Origin: Styela clava
Lineage: Eukaryota
Length of the DNA: 64,000 nucleotides
Direction: 5' to 3'
Assembly (NCBI RefSeq): GCF_964204865.1
Contig: NC_135254.1
Span: forward strand, 4,402,001-4,466,000
Below are positions 48,611 to 56,506 of the stretch, piece by piece. Position numbers and translations under genes: made by a program. The notes beneath the pieces are model-generated. The model was not told the DNA's origin. It did no database searches and worked only from the letters and a program-made list of their open reading frames with translations. Position 1 is the first letter of the stretch, and the number at the start of each line of letters is the position of its first letter.

Positions 48611-51600
48611 CTATCTCACCCATATTGATCCATCATACTCAAATCCTTTCGTCTCCAATGCTTTTTTCAGTTTCATTGTATGGTTTGGATCAGGATATCC
48701 ATTGCTGAAATAAAAAAGTATTCATGAACTTAGTTTGAACATGTTTATAGAAATATGATGGAAATTTGGTAAGTTTTCGGTTTAACAATAAAGAGTATTG
48801 AAATACAGAATTGGGTTCTAGGAATAAAAAATATTCGGCGCTCCTGAAGCATGTGAACCAAGATGGTGGACACCGGAATGTGGTATGTGTACCAGGTTTA
48901 GATACGACCATAATTTTATTCCAATTTCCTTTAGTTCTATTACGAGTTTGGAGACTAGCCAATTGCTCCCGTAGTATTTCTACTTGAAATTATAGCCTAA
49001 CCCTAACCTGGTACACATACTACATTCCAGTGTCCGCCATCTTGGTCAAATACTTTGGGAGTACCAAAATTTCGTCTGAGCAATCGAGAAAAAGTCAAAA
49101 CATTTAAATTTATCATGAGTGACCATTTTAGTTTGTGTTAGAAAATTTGTACGCCAATGTATGTCAGAAATTTCGACTTTTGCTTCAAAATTAAGAAGCC
49201 TAAAACTAAAAAAATAATTGAAAAAATACAACTCTAGTTTTGAATTGATACCAAAAAAATGTCAAAATTAACTTCGCTCCCTGCTCACCTCACAGGTTAT
49301 TACAATTTCAGATGAAATGAAAATCATACTAATTTATAAAGTCATGGCAAATAATCTCCTGTACACGATGACCAGGCAGTTTAATTAACATAGTTGGTCA
49401 GAGTGAATTATAAGAATACCATTGATTTGATAAGTCTGTCAGAACTGCTTGTATGGAGCCTTGCTCAGGGTGAAGTATAACAATAGCATTGGTACCAATA
49501 CCATAATTTAGATATCTAATCTATTTAATATATACAAGTCGTAGTCTTAATGGTTGAGTGGTTGTTTGGGATCTTTGGATCAGACCCTGGTAGTTTAGAA
49601 ACAATAAAGTGCCTTTAAATGAGTAAATCATCTTCATATAGAGATAGATGAGTTCAGTTTTCTTCTGAGCAAAAACAAGAAAAAAACGACTGGATAAAAC
49701 AAAATAACTTTTAGAAAGCAATTTTATCCAATATGCCTTTTATGCTTTGCAAATCGTGAAAAATAAATTCTAATATCCTTATTGGTGAAATTTATTCCCT
49801 GTAATTTTATTTAGCTGTTAAAATTAGACTCCCAAAAGAACTGTGATGTAGTGCAAAACGAAGGGATAACAAAATTTTAAAATCAGTTTTATTCTTTCCT
49901 ATTTCCTAACATTTTAGGAAGTAAATACCCACCAAACATAAAACACACAAAGTACTTACTTCTCAGGTCCTCCAGTTTTATTAGTCTTATGAGGAAACTC
50001 ATCGTTCCAAACAATTTTTCCTCTTCTGTCACCAACTTCCTGAATCTTGAAAATCAATCCTGCATTGAATGCTTGTCTGAGTAAGTTGAGACATATCAGT
50101 CCATCATCCCACGGCAAATATTCATTCTTCAATTCTTGAGCTTCATATGAAATACCCTGGAGAAACAAACATAACTAATCATCTCTCATACCTGGGGGTT
50201 TGTTAAACTGATATAAATATCAGAATATCTATGAAAGTTTAGCAGAAGGTAAAAATTTTCTAACAAAATACTTGGTGTTTCTAATAGATTAATTCAACTT
50301 GACAACCCAACAACTTATTTAAACATTGAAATCAGAAATTATAAGGAAGCCCGCTAAATATTTAGCTTGTCGTGATTTTACTGCACCATTGAATCAAATT
50401 CTAAATTAAACATAGAAGAACTAAATTCTATGAACAACTTAAATTTGAATAAACCATGAGTTTAATATTACTTAGTAAGTTTCAACAAGCATGATCTATA
50501 TATGGCTATGTTATGATTTTACTGCACAAATGGCTTCTATATTCGAACTTCTTCTCAATAACAAACCTTTCAAAGCTTGGATTTCCTCAAACAGCATACC
50601 AGTTTAAATTAATTATAGATGGACAAAGCATGAACCAGAGTCAACCCATATAAGCATTATACAAAATACTGCCTGATTCTGTATATTTCTATGAAAAGCA
50701 ATAACTCATGTGAGTGAATGCAAACATTTAGCAATACTTCTTTCAAGCTTCTGGACTGTGCAATGGCCTAACGCAGTGGTTACCAAAGGGTGTACCTCGG
50801 TGCACTAGTGTTACGCAACAATAGAGATTGACACTGCTTGCTGCAATTTCCCGAGCTGCAGTTTATTTATCTGTTGAGTTTGTTTGAAGTTTCAAAATAA
50901 AATCAGGCAGAGAAAAGTTGACATTAGGCATATATGTTTACAAACATAAAGTACACATTAATGATCACAATATTGAATTTTATCCAAATCTTTTTTCATT
51001 AGTGCACCATGCCACCGTTAGCAGTTTTTTTCCTAATAATTCAGCGCCGCACAACAAAAACGAATATAATAATATCTCCTTAAATAGCTCTGTCTAAATA
51101 GCTCAAATTTCATTAAATATAAGATATGACAGAAATAACGTTTTATCCTGGGGAGAGAAAAGCCGATAAGAGACGTAATCAAGTGGCGAACCACAGCCTC
51201 TCATCCGGTTACCAGTCTATAACACGTAAGAGATTGTTTAGCCAGTTATTCGTTTTCGGAAGCATGGACTTGATGGTGGAGGAGGCTGTAACAGACCAGT
51301 GATTACGTGAATCAGCCTACTAAATATTTGTGACTGCTTGTATAGGGCCTTGTTCAGAGCAAAAGGCATGAATAAGCATCGCATAAAAAAGTAACATGAC
51401 AGTACTATTATAAGGGATGTCTTTGCCATTATATCAAAATCACCATATTTGGAGCATTTATGAAATCAAAGGGTATGAAAGAAATTTTTCTATTTTCCAT
51501 CCGTGTTTTTGTTTACATCATGTTGTATTTAGTAAATTTTAACATATATAATATAATGATTTTGCTTCTGAATTGACAACAAGATATATATTTGTGACCC

Positions 51601-54600: not shown

Positions 54601-56506
54601 AAAGGCATTTGACTTTTTTCAAAGCAAAAGGGGAGCGCAAAGTTTGTAAGATTTGGGGACGCGGCTCAAAAAGTTTCCAACCATTGGTCTAGTGGTTAAA
54701 GAGCTAGATTTAACTGTAGGATGACATGACAGATTACACATCACAAGTTCAAACCCTGTGTCATGTCAAAGTGTGTAAAAGATTGGGTAGGCAATGCAAT
54801 ACAAGGGAAAATCTGGTCTTTAAAATAAAGTGCCGTTTTACATAACAAAATATATCAGTGGCTGCAAGTATATGGCCTTGTTTGTAAATTAATGTTTTAT
54901 AAAAATATTTAATGTGTCAAATGTCTGAGGGTATGAAGTAAAAAAACACTACTGACATGGGTAACTTCAAATGTGCCTCCTAATGCACTTCAATACAAAA
55001 AGTTTTCAATATTTCCATATTTTTCGATTAATTAGCCACTGTTGCGTATACTCTGGGCCAATTGTTAGCCAAATGAGAGTTTTATGAAAGATATTCCAGA
55101 TTCACATTGTAAAACCGCTGTTTCATAAAAAATGACAGGGAAAGTACGTCATCTTTGTTTTTCAGTATTTATAGTATAATAAACCTTTATGATAAATCTT
55201 TATTTTTAGTACCATTAGCTGGTCTGGAACTGGCAGTGCCATAACCAGATGCCCCTCCAATGACAGAAGATCCTTCCTCATCATCCTTTGAAACTGGTAG
55301 AGCCAAAGGTTGCTCTGCCTTCGGCTTTTCTTCAGCTTTTAAAGATGCTCGTGAAAATATTTCATCGATAAGCAAATCATTGCATTTATCTGATTTTTTC
55401 ACTAAGGGTTCAATTCGAATTGTCTCTTTTAGGAATTCGAGAGATAAATCTCCAAGTTTCAGCAAGCTAAACAGATCTTGGAAGATTTTTCTTCTGTTCT
55501 TGACATCATGTTTCACCCATTTCATCATCCCCCCATATTTGATAGTCTCAGAAGAATACTTTGTTTCTGAAGATTTGAAAAGTCTCAGTATGTCATCCTT
55601 GCTGATATCAAGAAATTCCTTTTTCTTGCTAATTTGTTCAAAATTTGTCTCCAAGAATAGAATAATGGAATCTTTTACTGCCGTTTGTTTAGGAGTTTGA
55701 TTGGTTTCAGAGAGATTCTTCAAGATAAAGCAGTTGTCAATATCAAGGTTTGTCTCAAGTTTTTTGACGTCAGAAAACAATGCAGTGATTACGGATTTCT
55801 CAGCTGTTTTATTGTTCTTAACAATGGGTTCTTTGAGGACAGTTTCCAGAAGAAATTTGAAGGGAAATTGCTCAATCTTAAAGAGTTCAGAAACATCTAT
55901 TTTATCTTTTCCTTTTGCCCATGTTACCACAGCTTTCCATAATGTTTGGTAAGTCTGGTCACTTATGTAAAGCAAGAGATCTGATTTGGTGATGAATGGA
56001 AACATCTCTGAAGAAATAACAGATTCGAAATTATCAATCACGACCTGTACAGCTTGTTGTTTTATATCACGACGGTCATACATTTGGGCCAAGTTGATTA
56101 CAGAGAGACAATTTATTGGAGAAATGTTAATTTCCAAGAATCGAAAACAAAGATTTGTTAATTCCACCATTTGTAAAAGATTGGAAGCATGCAGGATATG
56201 CTGAATGTTTTCTATTTTCAAATCTGCATTTCCTTTATACATGAACTCTATGCATTGTGCGATCCCATTCTGATCGACATCCTTCATATTAATGTGACCG
56301 TCATGAACTTCTTTCAAGTTGCTTGAAAACAAGGATTCAAAGTATTCTGAAGAGGCTGCCAAGACAGTACGATGCACTCGAAATGATTTTTCACCAACGT
56401 TGATGTTAAAATCGCAAAGAAACCCTTTCTCTTTGAACCTGTCATATGATGTCATGAGACGATCTGACTGTTTTACTCTAGCCTGGTGTATCACTTGTGA
56501 ATTCAT
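48611..56506 (-). CDS. BTB-BACK-BACK - coiled coil - Deltex C-terminal (DTC) domain protein, about 654 aa
   Basis: Exons 56506-55213 (donor G|GTACTA, phase 1), 53494-53282, 52042-51876, 50156-49960, 48704-48611; frame-consistent. The last four exons are paralogous to the kinase-DTC gene. The BTB-to-coiled-coil splice is inferred; read-through would stop at 55187. Confidence 0.65.
51140..51315 (-). mobile_element. 5'-truncated SINE copy
   Basis: TTTATCCTGGGAGAGAAAAGCCGATAAG...GCATGGACTTGATGGTGGAGGAGGCTGTAAC. Confidence 0.7.
52490..52745. mobile_element. Helentron-associated (HINE/DINE-1-like) non-autonomous element
   Basis: Sits in an A/T run with no TSD, carries a (GACA)n microsatellite and a terminal hairpin CTTACCGAT-TAAA-ATCGATAAG; absent at homologous intron sites ~30675 and ~54945. 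Confidence 0.6.
52905..53215 (-). mobile_element. SINE copy in an intron of the BTB-DTC gene
   Basis: Same position relative to the coiled-coil exon as 31150-31425. Confidence 0.75.
55187..56506 (-). CDS. BTB/POZ + tandem BACK exon (KLHL-type N-terminus, no Kelch repeats)
   Basis: 439-aa ORF: LCDFNINVGEKSFRVHRTVLAASSEYF (BTB), NCLSVINLAQMY..IDNFESV (BACK 1), NCFILKNL..LETNFEQI..EFLDIS..WVKHD..R (BACK 2). Confidence 0.92.
   Translation of the reverse strand: MNSQVIHQARVKQSDRLMTSYDRFKEKGFLCDFNINVGEKSFRVHRTVLAASSEYFESLFSSNLKEVHDGHINMKDVDQNGIAQCIEFMYKGNADLKIENIQHILHASNLLQMVELTNLCFRFLEINISPINCLSVINLAQMYDRRDIKQQAVQVVIDNFESVISSEMFPFITKSDLLLYISDQTYQTLWKAVVTWAKGKDKIDVSELFKIEQFPFKFLLETVLKEPIVKNNKTAEKSVITALFSDVKKLETNLDIDNCFILKNLSETNQTPKQTAVKDSIILFLETNFEQISKKKEFLDISKDDILRLFKSSETKYSSETIKYGGMMKWVKHDVKNRRKIFQDLFSLLKLGDLSLEFLKETIRIEPLVKKSDKCNDLLIDEIFSRASLKAEEKPKAEQPLALPVSKDDEEGSSVIGGASGYGTASSRPANGTKNKDLS

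What the first reader, a model, noticed from the sequence alone, without database searches (positions are those of the whole stretch)
48611..56506. BTB-BACK adaptor whose Kelch substrate domain is replaced by DTC: a Deltex-like ligase rebuilt in trans
Seen: KLHL-type BTB plus two BACK repeats in one 1.3-kb exon, no Kelch repeats anywhere downstream, and a phase-1 donor (G|GTACTA at 55213) matching the phase-1 acceptor at 53494. The CC-DTC exons have no other evident upstream start. Known: BTB-BACK recruits CUL3-RBX1, which supplies a RING. Inference: this restores the RING+DTC pairing via a cullin complex. Read-through to the stop at 55187 could also give a BTB-only isoform.
Basis: partly seen in the sequence, partly recalled or inferred. 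Interest (0 to 1): 0.75.

Follow-up and report, generated by a model that had tools for sequence, protein, structure and literature searches.

The report
Cullin-3 adaptor carrying variable Deltex domain
This sea-squirt gene really does splice a Cullin-3 docking head (BTB-BACK) onto a Deltex C-terminal domain, but that domain has lost the Deltex catalytic residues and evolves fast in three patches, so it looks like a target-picking module of a large gene family, not a rebuilt Deltex enzyme.

Summary
Observation confirmed. On the minus strand a 1.3-kb BTB+BACK+BACK exon (56506-55213) is spliced from its phase-1 donor to a coiled-coil exon (53494) or directly to the first of three DTC exons (52042). 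Both joints stand in RNA-like contigs of three studies and not in a DNA control. RefSeq models of paralogs (named Styela clava) show the same three forms: with the coiled-coil exon, without it, and a BTB-only read-through.

Interpretation partly supported. The BTB keeps the Cul3 hydrophobic-x-Glu motif and the 3-box. The DTC has the Deltex fold (TM 0.83 to DTX3L). But the residues needed for Deltex chemistry are replaced: DTX3L H707 is Pro, Y719 is Asn and E733 is Ala, here and in nearly all aligned paralogs. Canonical Deltex genes in the same genome keep them.

The gene belongs to a tandem family: 57 of 96 scored BTB-BACK matches are at least 50% identical. dN/dS is 0.29 in the BTB exon and 1.73 in DTC exon 1.

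Best reading: a Cullin-3 substrate receptor with a diversifying, catalytically dead DTC. A kinase-CC-DTC sister gene lies in the same window. This scan found the family before on other DNA of this genome (s1-822904, s1-813319). I found no paper describing it.

The parts
55213..56506 (-). Coding exon 1: BTB + BACK + BACK + acidic/Gly-Ser linker, ending in the phase-1 donor G|GTACTA
   Evidence: ORF; Pfam; donor read; donor G|GT kept in 21 of 21 copies
56132..56443 (-). BTB domain (residues 22-125), with L-K-E at the Cul3 hydrophobic-x-Glu position
   Evidence: Pfam BTB E 9e-26; alignments to KLHL3 4hxi and KLHL11 4ap2; Phe-130/Met-233 role from passages of PMC3597819
55901..56110 (-). BACK match 1 (residues 133-202; includes the 3-box helices)
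   Evidence: Pfam BACK 30.2 bits, profile 1-75; residues 125-152 align with KLHL3 145-172
55418..55687 (-). BACK match 2 (residues 274-363)
   Evidence: Pfam BACK 57 bits, profile 13-102; aligns with KLHL3 173-273
55187..55212 (-). Read-through tail (TKNKDLS, after the shared Gly codon) and stop, giving a BTB-BACK-only form if the donor is not used
   Evidence: unspliced RNA-like contig X8 record 27; RefSeq paralog model P0011 ends in the homologous read-through tail
53282..53494 (-). Optional Glu/Lys-rich coiled-coil-like cassette exon (phase 1 to phase 1)
   Evidence: Joint 55213|53494 in X2 and X8; skipped in X1 and X2; present in P0005, absent in P0002; found in 4 of 20 paralog loci within 10 kb
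51876..52042 (-). DTC exon 1 (Ser/Gln-rich linker and first strands of the DTC)
   Evidence: Pfam DTC E 2.5e-4; joint 55213|52042; dN/dS 1.73, codon-bootstrap CI 1.07-2.87
51948..51974 (-). Hypervariable patch 1 (exon codons 23-31)
   Evidence: Up to 9 different residues per column among 20 copies; lies on strand 130-136 of the model of paralog P0058
51912..51926 (-). Hypervariable patch 2 (exon codons 39-43, just after LPGYEG)
   Evidence: falls at the end of the loop before strand 148-155 of the model
49960..50156 (-). DTC exon 2 (YLP motif, helix, WNDEFPHKT)
   Evidence: Pfam DTC E 6.7e-6; aligns with 3pg6
50091..50111 (-). Hypervariable patch 3 (exon codons 16-22, after EYLP)
   Evidence: falls in the loop between strand 168-175 and helix 178-192 of the model
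49992..49994 (-). Pro codon at the place of the Deltex catalytic His (DTX3L H707 / DTX2 H582)
   Evidence: EFPHKT against -IHHKT; Pro in 17 of 18 copies, Ser in 1, His in none
48611..48704 (-). DTC exon 3 (NGYPDP and last helix) with stop TAG
48701..48703 (-). Asn codon at the place of DTX3L Y719 / DTX2 H594 (adenine stacking)
   Evidence: NNGYPDP against MYGYPDP; Asn in 15 of 16 copies
48659..48661 (-). Ala codon at the place of the Deltex catalytic Glu (DTX3L E733 / DTX2 E608)
   Evidence: KKALETKGF against KEELKAKGI; Ala in 16 of 16 copies

Best explanation
The locus is one expressed gene of a large, tandemly expanded family in a sea squirt. Its protein is BTB, then two BACK matches, then an optional coiled coil, then a DTC domain.

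Shown here: the splice structure, the domains, the family and the selection pattern.

Inferred: the BTB/3-box head dimerises and docks Cullin-3-RBX1 as KLHL proteins do. The DTC sits where the Kelch propeller would and serves as the target-binding end. This DTC keeps the Deltex fold but has lost the His-Glu pair and the stacking residue needed to put ubiquitin on ADP-ribose. In exchange it carries three hypervariable patches under diversifying selection. The complex would then ubiquitinate lysines of whatever each paralog's DTC binds. That would make the family a repertoire of receptors with different specificities, possibly aimed at fast-changing targets such as pathogen or non-self molecules.

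Skipping the coiled-coil exon would change the spacing or the oligomeric state. Read-through at the donor would give a head-only form that could compete for Cullin-3.
For: Splicing: RNA-like contigs join 55213 to 53494 (X2, X8) and to 52042 (X1, X2), and 0 contigs do so in DNA run X10. In the precomputed Pfam column, 39 of 59 homologs, all 59 named Styela clava, carry BTB+BACK+DTC. P0005, P0002 and P0011 show the three forms. An unnamed 2175-base contig encodes a 546-aa BTB-BACK-DTC protein, P0061, 43% identical.

Cul3 features: L-K-E at the hydrophobic-x-Glu site, and the 3-box aligned with KLHL3 and KLHL11.

DTC fold: Pfam E 3.5e-20 for paralog P0005. The model of paralog P0058 has pLDDT above 90 over the DTC and TM 0.83, rmsd 2.1 A to 3pg6. 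All 9 fold hits at E<=0.001 are Deltex DTCs.

Lost catalytic residues. The mutant effects come from passages of PMC11460948 (H707A abolishes, E733A impairs, Y719A defective), PMC7615817 (E608Q has a marked effect) and PMC7442474 (the S568A/H582A/H594A mutant was designed to abolish ADP-ribose binding; the seen passages report lost substrate ubiquitination).

Family: 57 of 96 scored BTB-BACK matches are at least 50% identical, and 28 of them are at least 79% identical on contig C5 between 2.78 and 4.80 Mb. Behind the BTB exon within 10 kb, DTC exons 1, 2 and 3 lie colinear in 19, 18 and 15 of 20 fetched loci.

Selection: dN/dS is 0.29 for the BTB exon (CI 0.22-0.36) and 1.73 for DTC exon 1 (CI 1.07-2.87), at similar dS. 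In 10 disjoint pairs DTC exon 1 gives pN/pS 1.47 (binomial P 0.017), and its nonsynonymous:synonymous counts of 173:38 against 244:198 in the BTB exon give Fisher P 7e-12.

Shared module: a kinase-CC-DTC gene lies in the same window, with 15 near-identical kinase exons genome-wide, 14 of them on C5 among the BTB genes.
Against: No binding or activity was tested, so Cul3 docking is inferred from aligned motifs only.

The joints have short sides (19-30 letters) and come from contigs. Paralogs are 93-95% alike, so a joint could belong to a near copy. However, the exon parts of those contigs differ from the window at about 1%, and X2 and X8 share two variants with the genomic contig of X10 that runs into this copy's intron.

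dN/dS above 1 holds for DTC exon 1 only. Exon 2 gives 1.08 and exon 3 gives 0.70. The value of 3.14 for the patches is inflated, because I chose the patches by their variability.

Pairwise counts are not independent, and gene conversion or exon swapping between paralogs could distort them. For example, the BTB exons of L005 and L006 differ by 0.4% while their DTC exon 1 sequences differ a lot.

Whether the three patches lie together on one surface, or near the old pocket, could not be checked because no coordinates are returned.

An immune role is pure inference.
Confidence: 0.6

Rival explanations
1. One reading: a Deltex rebuilt in trans. The DTC binds ADP-ribose (or a nucleic-acid 3' end), and RBX1 of the Cullin-3 complex brings E2~Ub to it, so that ubiquitin is esterified onto ADP-ribose as in DTX enzymes.
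For: The DTC fold is intact. The Trp of the pocket (DTX2 W578) and the GYPDP frame are kept. The BTB head has the Cul3 motifs.
Against: The catalytic His is Pro, the catalytic Glu is Ala, the stacking His/Tyr is Asn and the diphosphate Arg is Phe or Leu, in this copy and across the family. In human DTX3L, H707A abolishes and E733A impairs the reaction (PMC11460948). In Deltex the RING and DTC are linked by a short flexible linker that puts the thioester next to the pocket (PMC7442474); a receptor position on a cullin arm is a different geometry. That last point is inference.
Confidence: 0.07
2. A reader, not a writer. The DTC still recognises an ADP-ribose-like or nucleotide-bearing mark through a remodelled pocket. 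The Cullin-3 complex (or the kinase head in the sister family) then acts on proteins that carry that mark.
For: The DTC of DTX2 can recruit PARylated proteins on its own (PMC7442474 passages). The pocket Trp is conserved. The same module is attached to two different effector heads.
Against: Two of the three residues whose joint mutation was designed to abolish ADP-ribose binding in DTX2 (H582 and H594) are replaced, and so is R535. One fixed small ligand would not explain three hypervariable patches under diversifying selection.
Confidence: 0.18
3. Not a ligase adaptor. The BTB-BACK head serves only for oligomerisation or localisation, and the protein acts as a scaffold or decoy, for example by soaking up partners of the real Deltex/PARP pathway.
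For: Many BTB proteins do not use Cul3 (general knowledge, recalled). The doubled BACK is unusual. A kinase head can replace the BTB head.
Against: The hydrophobic-x-Glu motif and the 3-box are kept, and the head is under purifying selection with dN/dS 0.29. The nearest solved relatives are Cul3-binding KLHL3 and KLHL11. A Styela BTB-BACK-Kelch protein, P0056, has the same long head.
Confidence: 0.12
4. Two separate genes or an annotation artefact: a BTB-only gene ending at 55187, and an unrelated DTC gene downstream.
For: The donor GTACTA is weak. An unspliced contig crosses it, and contigs cover 54981-55208 at low depth.
Against: Both joints stand in RNA-like contigs of three studies and not in DNA. 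BTB and DTC are colinear in 19 of 20 paralog loci. The donor is conserved in 21 of 21 copies. A continuous BTB-BACK-DTC ORF stands on an mRNA-sized contig at 43% identity (P0061).
Confidence: 0.03

Closest known systems
KLHL / KBTBD BTB-BACK-Kelch substrate adaptors of Cullin-3 (KLHL3, KLHL11, KEAP1)
   Same: BTB with the hydrophobic-x-Glu loop, 3-box and BACK. The best PDB sequence hits are KLHL3 (E 6.9e-29) and KLHL11. The overall plan is the same: a docking head followed by a C-terminal target-binding domain.
   Different: No Kelch propeller; a DTC domain takes its place. There are two BACK matches instead of one. The substrate end sits on separate exons, with an optional coiled-coil cassette.
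Deltex E3 ligases (DTX1-4, DTX3L): RING + DTC
   Same: The DTC fold: TM 0.83 to 3pg6 and 38-39% identity over the fold alignment. The LPGY, YLP, W-N-D, HKT and GYPDP frame is kept.
   Different: No RING and no WWE. The catalytic His, the catalytic Glu, the stacking residue and the diphosphate Arg are replaced. There are hypervariable patches. Canonical DTX genes with intact residues coexist in the genome (L021, L023).
Expanded MATH-BTB and F-box adaptor families of Caenorhabditis (Thomas 2006, Genome Res 16:1017)
   Same: A large lineage-specific expansion of cullin adaptors, with a conserved cullin-binding end and positively selected sites in the substrate-binding end. These families have been proposed to target pathogen proteins. 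I saw this in passages and the reference entry of PMC5392922; the original paper is not held.
   Different: The variable domain here is a DTC fold, not MATH or FTH. The animal is a tunicate. The same variable module is also attached to a protein kinase head.

Membership tests
BTB-BACK Cullin-3 substrate adaptors (KLHL type) | BTB/POZ domain | tested here: met
   Pfam PF00651 E 9e-26, 90.7 bits against a cut-off of 20.5
BTB-BACK Cullin-3 substrate adaptors (KLHL type) | Hydrophobic-x-Glu motif in the alpha3-beta4 loop that clamps Cul3 helix H2 | tested here: met
   L-K-E aligns with M-S-E of KLHL3 and F-S-E of KLHL11. KLHL11 Phe-130 equals SPOP Met-233 (passages of PMC3597819).
BTB-BACK Cullin-3 substrate adaptors (KLHL type) | 3-box / BACK helices after the BTB | tested here: met
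   Residues 125-152 align with KLHL3 145-172. There are two BACK matches above the cut-off.
BTB-BACK Cullin-3 substrate adaptors (KLHL type) | Kelch propeller as the substrate end (for the KLHL subfamily proper) | tested here: not met
   No Kelch hit in Pfam. tblastn with the Kelch half of P0056 finds nothing below E 4.2 in the window.
BTB-BACK Cullin-3 substrate adaptors (KLHL type) | Physical binding to Cullin-3 | not testable with these tools
   Needs a pull-down or ITC. I did not look for the Cul3 gene in this genome.
Deltex (DTX) E3 ligases | DTC fold | tested here: met
   Pfam DTC E 3.5e-20 (P0005). The window's exons score E 2.5e-4 and 6.7e-6. The fold search gives TM 0.83 to 3pg6, and all 9 hits at E<=0.001 are Deltex (model of paralog P0058).
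Deltex (DTX) E3 ligases | RING domain directly before the DTC | tested here: not met
   No RING family in Pfam scans of the window's exons or of P0005 and P0002. A Ser/Gln linker or the coiled-coil exon precedes the DTC.
Deltex (DTX) E3 ligases | Catalytic His-Glu pair (DTX2 H582/E608; DTX3L H707/E733) | tested here: not met
   Pro and Ala in the window. At the His site 17 of 18 copies have Pro, 1 has Ser and none has His. At the Glu site 16 of 16 copies have Ala.
Deltex (DTX) E3 ligases | ADP-ribose pocket residues (DTX2 R535, W578, H582, H594; S567/S568 contact through the main chain) | tested here: not met
   Only the Trp is kept. In the paralogs R535 aligns with Phe (Leu or Lys in this copy), H582 with Pro and H594 with Asn. 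The residue list is from PMC7442474.
Adaptively evolving cullin-adaptor expansions (nematode MATH-BTB / F-box type) | Large lineage-specific tandem expansion | tested here: met
   57 of 96 scored matches are at least 50% identical, clustered on C5 and C6. All 59 protein homologs are named Styela clava. Among the best 150 of 1.84 billion representatives, only 4 have BTB-BACK plus DTC: 3 Styela and 1 unnamed.
Adaptively evolving cullin-adaptor expansions (nematode MATH-BTB / F-box type) | Purifying selection on the cullin-binding end, positive selection in the substrate end | tested here: met
   dN/dS is 0.29 for the BTB exon and 1.73 for DTC exon 1. Disjoint pairs give P 0.017 and Fisher 7e-12. 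Exons 2 and 3 are not above 1.
Adaptively evolving cullin-adaptor expansions (nematode MATH-BTB / F-box type) | Link to infection or non-self response | not testable with these tools
   No challenge data were available.

The most novel reading that the evidence does not exclude
A germline repertoire of recognition proteins built on the Deltex C-terminal fold. Dozens of paralogous DTC domains have three diversifying patches. Each is wired by phase-1 exon shuffling either to a Cullin-3 docking head (destroy the target) or to a protein kinase head (signal its presence). Together they would form a two-armed innate immune or non-self recognition system peculiar to styelid sea squirts.
Probability: 0.25. 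Interest if true: 0.85.

Novelty: new variant of a known kind. Interest (0 to 1): 0.6.

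Why it matters
The DTC domain is known only as the partner of a RING in Deltex ligases, where it binds ADP-ribose and supplies catalytic residues. Here the same fold has been cut loose from the RING, has lost that chemistry, has been multiplied to dozens of copies and is diversifying in three patches, all while attached to a Cullin-3 adaptor head or to a kinase. That would make it a new kind of substrate-recognition domain for cullin ligases. It would also be a second animal example, after the nematode MATH-BTB and F-box families, of cullin adaptors evolving like immune receptors, this time in a close invertebrate relative of vertebrates. 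It gives workers on ubiquitin and ADP-ribosylation a natural pseudo-enzyme version of the DTC for asking what else the fold can bind.

Tried and rejected
Two-gene artefact: rejected by the joints and the colinearity.

Relaxed constraint or pseudogenes as the cause of the high dN: judged unlikely. No stop codon appears in the aligned parts of the exons recovered from the 20 loci (stop codons were set aside in the counts). The framework of the DTC is conserved. Outside the patches dN/dS is 0.78, and dS is similar between exons.

Searches that led nowhere:
- The ESM Atlas search with P0005 gave only BTB/BACK clusters at scores of 0.80 or less, and no cluster with both BTB and DTC.
- Paper searches for the fusion: 'DTC domain' plus 'BTB' gave 1 paper, an unrelated lymphoma review. 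'BTB', 'Deltex C-terminal', 'BACK' gave nothing relevant among the 20 listed. 'Styela clava' with Deltex, BTB or kelch gave nothing relevant among the 12 listed. So I found no description in print within that library. Subscription journals and supplements were not seen.
- A search for MATH-BTB positive selection gave no direct source. The Thomas 2006 paper is not held and is cited through PMC5392922.
- Single window exons found only DTX3L in the PDB by sequence, not DTX2. DTX2 numbering is therefore carried over through the DTX3L equivalences stated in PMC11460948.

Not done:
- I could not test whether the hypervariable patches cluster in space or near the old pocket, because no coordinates are returned.
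Whole-protein searches and the structure model used RefSeq paralogs as deposited (P0005, P0058).
- I did not look for Cul3 in the genome.
- Supplementary files were not opened; none bears on a claim made here.

Full report
WHAT IS THERE. The window is G000:C5:4402001-4466000 of a 377-Mb animal genome. All 59 protein homologs found carry the source name Styela clava, a sea squirt.

On the minus strand an ORF runs from 56506 to 55187 (439 aa). Pfam finds BTB (E 9e-26) and BACK in two stretches. Scanned apart, the first BACK match covers residues 133-202 (30.2 bits) and the second covers residues 274-363 (57 bits), against a cut-off of 20.9.

Reading the sequence, the exon can end at 55213 with the donor G|GTACTA (phase 1). 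Downstream lie four further exons:
- a Glu/Lys-rich exon, 53494-53282, phase 1 in and out;
- DTC exon 1, 52042-51876;
- DTC exon 2, 50156-49960;
- DTC exon 3, 48704-48611, ending in a TAG stop.

All have GT..AG borders. Taken singly, exons 1 and 2 hit Pfam DTC (E 2.5e-4 and 6.7e-6), and exons 2 and 3 align with the DTX3L DTC structure 3pg6. The Kelch half of a Styela BTB-BACK-Kelch protein finds nothing in the window (best E 4.2).

IS IT ONE GENE? I laid contigs of three RNA-like runs from three studies (X1, X2, X8) and one DNA-like run (X10) on 51700-56600. A joint from 55213 to 53494 stands in X2 (side 19) and X8 (side 30). A joint from 55213 to 52042, which skips the coiled-coil exon, stands in X1 (side 27) and X2 (side 23). 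Neither stands in X10. The skipped stretches end GT..AG on the minus strand.

The sides are short and the paralogs are close. Still, the exon parts of these contigs differ from the window at about 1% (3-4 letters in about 300), and X2 and X8 share variants at 55420 and 55472 with the genomic contig of X10 that continues into this copy's intron. One RNA-like contig (X8 record 27, 54981-55240) crosses the donor unspliced, and X1 record 3 covers 55017-55208, so a read-through or intron-retaining form exists at low depth.

RefSeq models of paralogs show the same three forms:
- P0005 (653 aa): head, coiled coil and DTC;
- P0002 (585 aa): head and DTC;
- P0011 (448 aa): head only, ending in the read-through tail that I found in paralog loci.

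tblastn places P0005 on all five window exons in order.

THE FAMILY. The head exon has 96 scored matches in this genome, out of 417 candidates. Of these, 57 are at least 50% identical, and 28 are at least 79% identical on C5 between 2.78 and 4.80 Mb. Another cluster lies on C6 near 22 Mb.

I fetched 10 kb from each of 20 C5 copies. Behind the head exon, on the same strand and in order, DTC exon 1 lies in 19 of 20, exon 2 in 18 of 20 and exon 3 in 15 of 20. The missing ones probably fall beyond the 10 kb. The coiled-coil exon is found in 4 of 20. The donor G|GT is kept in 21 of 21 copies.

In the protein search, 39 of the 59 homologs carry BTB+BACK+DTC. I also searched 1.84 billion cluster representatives with P0005. 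Among the best 150, a local domain check found BTB-BACK together with DTC in only four: three named Styela clava, and P0061, a 546-aa protein on an unnamed 2175-base contig at 43% identity. Any protein matching both ends would score high enough to be listed. Within this library, then, the architecture looks confined to this lineage.

THE HEAD. The nearest solved relatives by sequence are KLHL3 (E 6.9e-29) and KLHL11, both crystallised with Cul3. In the alignments, L-K-E of this family stands at M-S-E of KLHL3 and F-S-E of KLHL11. The Phe is KLHL11 Phe-130, equivalent to SPOP Met-233, on the loop that clamps Cul3 (passages of PMC3597819). The 3-box helices (residues 125-152) align with KLHL3 145-172. 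Then about 130 residues, the first BACK match, are inserted before the rest of the BACK resumes. A Styela BTB-BACK-Kelch protein (P0056) aligns over the whole long head at 40% identity, so the doubled BACK predates the swap of Kelch for DTC. Cul3 docking is therefore plausible, but it is inferred.

THE DTC. The fold is not in doubt. Paralog P0005 scores Pfam E 3.5e-20. An AlphaFold model of paralog P0058, built on alignment A1, has pLDDT above 90 over the DTC. It matches 3pg6 with TM 0.83 and rmsd 2.1 A, and all 9 hits at E<=0.001 are Deltex DTCs.

The chemistry is another matter. From passages I read:
- DTX2 binds ADP-ribose through R535, S567/S568 (main chain), W578, H582 and H594, and a S568A/H582A/H594A mutant was made to abolish ADP-ribose binding; the passages I saw report abrogated ubiquitination of the model PARylated substrate (PMC7442474).
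- H582 and E608 act as a catalytic pair, and E608Q has a marked effect (PMC7615817).
- In DTX3L the equivalents are H707, Y719 and E733. H707A abolishes ubiquitination of single-stranded DNA, E733A impairs it and Y719A is defective (PMC11460948).

In chain 3pg6_A these three are H126, Y138 and E152; the spacings of 12 and 26 fix the register. The window's exons align there with Pro (EFPHKT against -IHHKT), Asn (NNGYPDP against MYGYPDP) and Ala (KKALETKGF against KEELKAKGI).

Among the 20 paralogs and the window:
- the His site is Pro in 17 of 18 copies, Ser in 1, and never His;
- the Tyr/His site is Asn in 15 of 16 copies;
- the Glu site is Ala in 16 of 16 copies.

In the wider family, including the kinase-linked and the 43%-identical members, the His site is Pro, Leu or Ser, the Glu site is Ala, Val or Ser, and the Arg site is Phe or Ile. 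Seven DTCs of three RING-DTC proteins (P0102, named as a fish DTX3L; P0136 and P0167, unnamed) mostly keep His, Glu and Arg.

The genome itself holds canonical Deltex genes that keep them. L021 has a RING, then IHHKT and QEL. L023 has PRVGYLPD, SS, IHHKT, HGYPD and SEL. This DTC family is therefore very probably unable to do Deltex chemistry, and canonical ADP-ribose binding is unlikely.

SELECTION. Codon alignments were made exon by exon for the window and the 20 loci, using Nei-Gojobori counts with a codon bootstrap:

| Exon | dN/dS | 95% CI |
|---|---|---|
| Head (BTB-BACK) | 0.29 | 0.22-0.36 |
| DTC exon 1 | 1.73 | 1.07-2.87 |
| DTC exon 2 | 1.08 | 0.58-1.97 |
| DTC exon 3 | 0.70 | 0.34-1.59 |

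In the closest group of copies, dS is about the same in the head exon and in DTC exon 1 (0.078 and 0.080). With 10 disjoint pairs, DTC exon 1 gives pN/pS 1.47 (binomial P 0.017). Its nonsynonymous:synonymous counts are 173:38, against 244:198 in the head (Fisher P 7e-12).

The changes are concentrated in three patches: exon 1 codons 23-31 and 39-43, and exon 2 codons 16-22. These reach up to 9 residues per column, in an otherwise conserved frame. Pooled, the patches give dN/dS 3.14, but I picked them by their variability, so that figure is biased upward. On the model they fall on the first long strand, at the end of the following loop, and in the loop before the main helix.

Caveats: the pairs share history, and mosaic evolution is visible. 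The head exons of L005 and L006 differ by 0.4% while their DTC exon 1 sequences differ strongly.

THE NEIGHBOUR. The window holds a second set of coiled-coil and DTC exons at 31584-25731 (-), behind a protein kinase exon at 33143-32289. That exon scores Pfam Pkinase E 6.6e-42 and keeps HRDLKPDN and DFG. Two small 5' exons lie at 34796-34578 and 34017-33859. Together they match the RefSeq protein P0064 (kinase+DTC), 95% identical over the kinase exon.

The kinase exon has 15 copies at 93% identity or more. Fourteen are on C5 among the BTB genes, and about 8 copies near 52% identity lie on C6 near 22 Mb (7) and at 18.7 Mb (1), regions that also hold BTB-BACK-DTC genes. Both heads join the module through phase-1 donors. 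One variable DTC module is thus shared by two effector heads.

READING. The structure, the family and the selection pattern are shown. The mechanism is inferred: a dimeric Cul3 adaptor whose target-binding end is a diversifying, catalytically dead DTC.

This pattern resembles the MATH-BTB and F-box adaptor expansions of Caenorhabditis. Those have positively selected substrate-binding sites and a proposed anti-pathogen role (passages and the reference to Thomas 2006 in PMC5392922; the original is not held).

NOVELTY. The gene models are in RefSeq as 'uncharacterized protein'. I found no paper that describes a BTB-DTC fusion or this family. After I had reached the reading above, a look-up showed that this scan had already reported the family from two other stretches of the same genome, with the same conclusion (s1-822904 and s1-813319). 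A note on this window, s1-817642, reports excess amino-acid change in the kinase gene's DTC exon. I rate the finding a new variant of a known kind, with interest 0.6.

Noticed in passing
window 25731-34796 (-): A second gene with a protein kinase head: exons at 34796-34578 and 34017-33859, then the kinase exon 33143-32289. It is followed by two coiled-coil exons and three DTC exons (30302-30120, 27433-27233, 25823-25731). It matches RefSeq P0064 (kinase+DTC), 95% identical over the kinase exon. There are 15 near-identical kinase exons genome-wide, 14 of them on C5 among the BTB genes.
   Followed up: partly
L022 (G000:C1:11085000-11088500): A RING-containing Deltex-like gene whose DTC already reads IPHKT (Pro at the catalytic His) and RQTL (Thr at the catalytic Glu), and shares AFDAGL with the family. 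It may be the lineage from which the RING-less DTC module came. L021 and L023 are canonical Deltex genes with intact residues.
   Followed up: partly
window 52356-52847 (intron between the CC exon and DTC exon 1): A very high-copy repeat. Summed contig depth reaches 10^4 in the RNA-like runs and 5x10^5 in the DNA-like run, with many rearranged joints in the DNA run. A similar stretch lies in the intron at about 54700-54760, and further ones lie in the kinase gene's introns.
   Followed up: no
L005 and L006 (G000:C5:2994856-3004855 and 4730114-4740113): The head exons differ by only 0.4% of bases, while the DTC exon 1 sequences differ at many residues. This is mosaic history (gene conversion of heads, or swapping of DTC exons) within the family.
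   Followed up: partly
window 20340-20696 (+) and 40910-41284 (+): Two ORFs about 20.5 kb apart end in the same roughly 70-residue peptide (LQGIQQENNAIRSLQHENDELRQ...). It is a duplicated plus-strand exon, which suggests that the tandem unit carries a third gene.
   Followed up: no
window 35718-36080 (-), 62169-62543 (-), 11573-11950 (+): ORFs that share peptide stretches (MANHGLSS..., EEAVTDQRLxEPPNDxEE...NPLAHNHPCM). They are probably copies of one dispersed repeat.
   Followed up: no
P0056 and G000:C14:3.83-3.95 Mb: Single-exon BTB-BACK-Kelch genes (open frames of 630-713 aa, about 40% identical to the head) also form tandem clusters. P0056 has the same long double-BACK head, so the head type is older than the DTC fusion.
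   Followed up: partly
window 56509-56510: RNA-like contig X1 record 8 matches up to 56509 and then carries 17 letters that do not fit the window. This suggests a spliced non-coding 5' exon upstream of the start codon.
   Followed up: no
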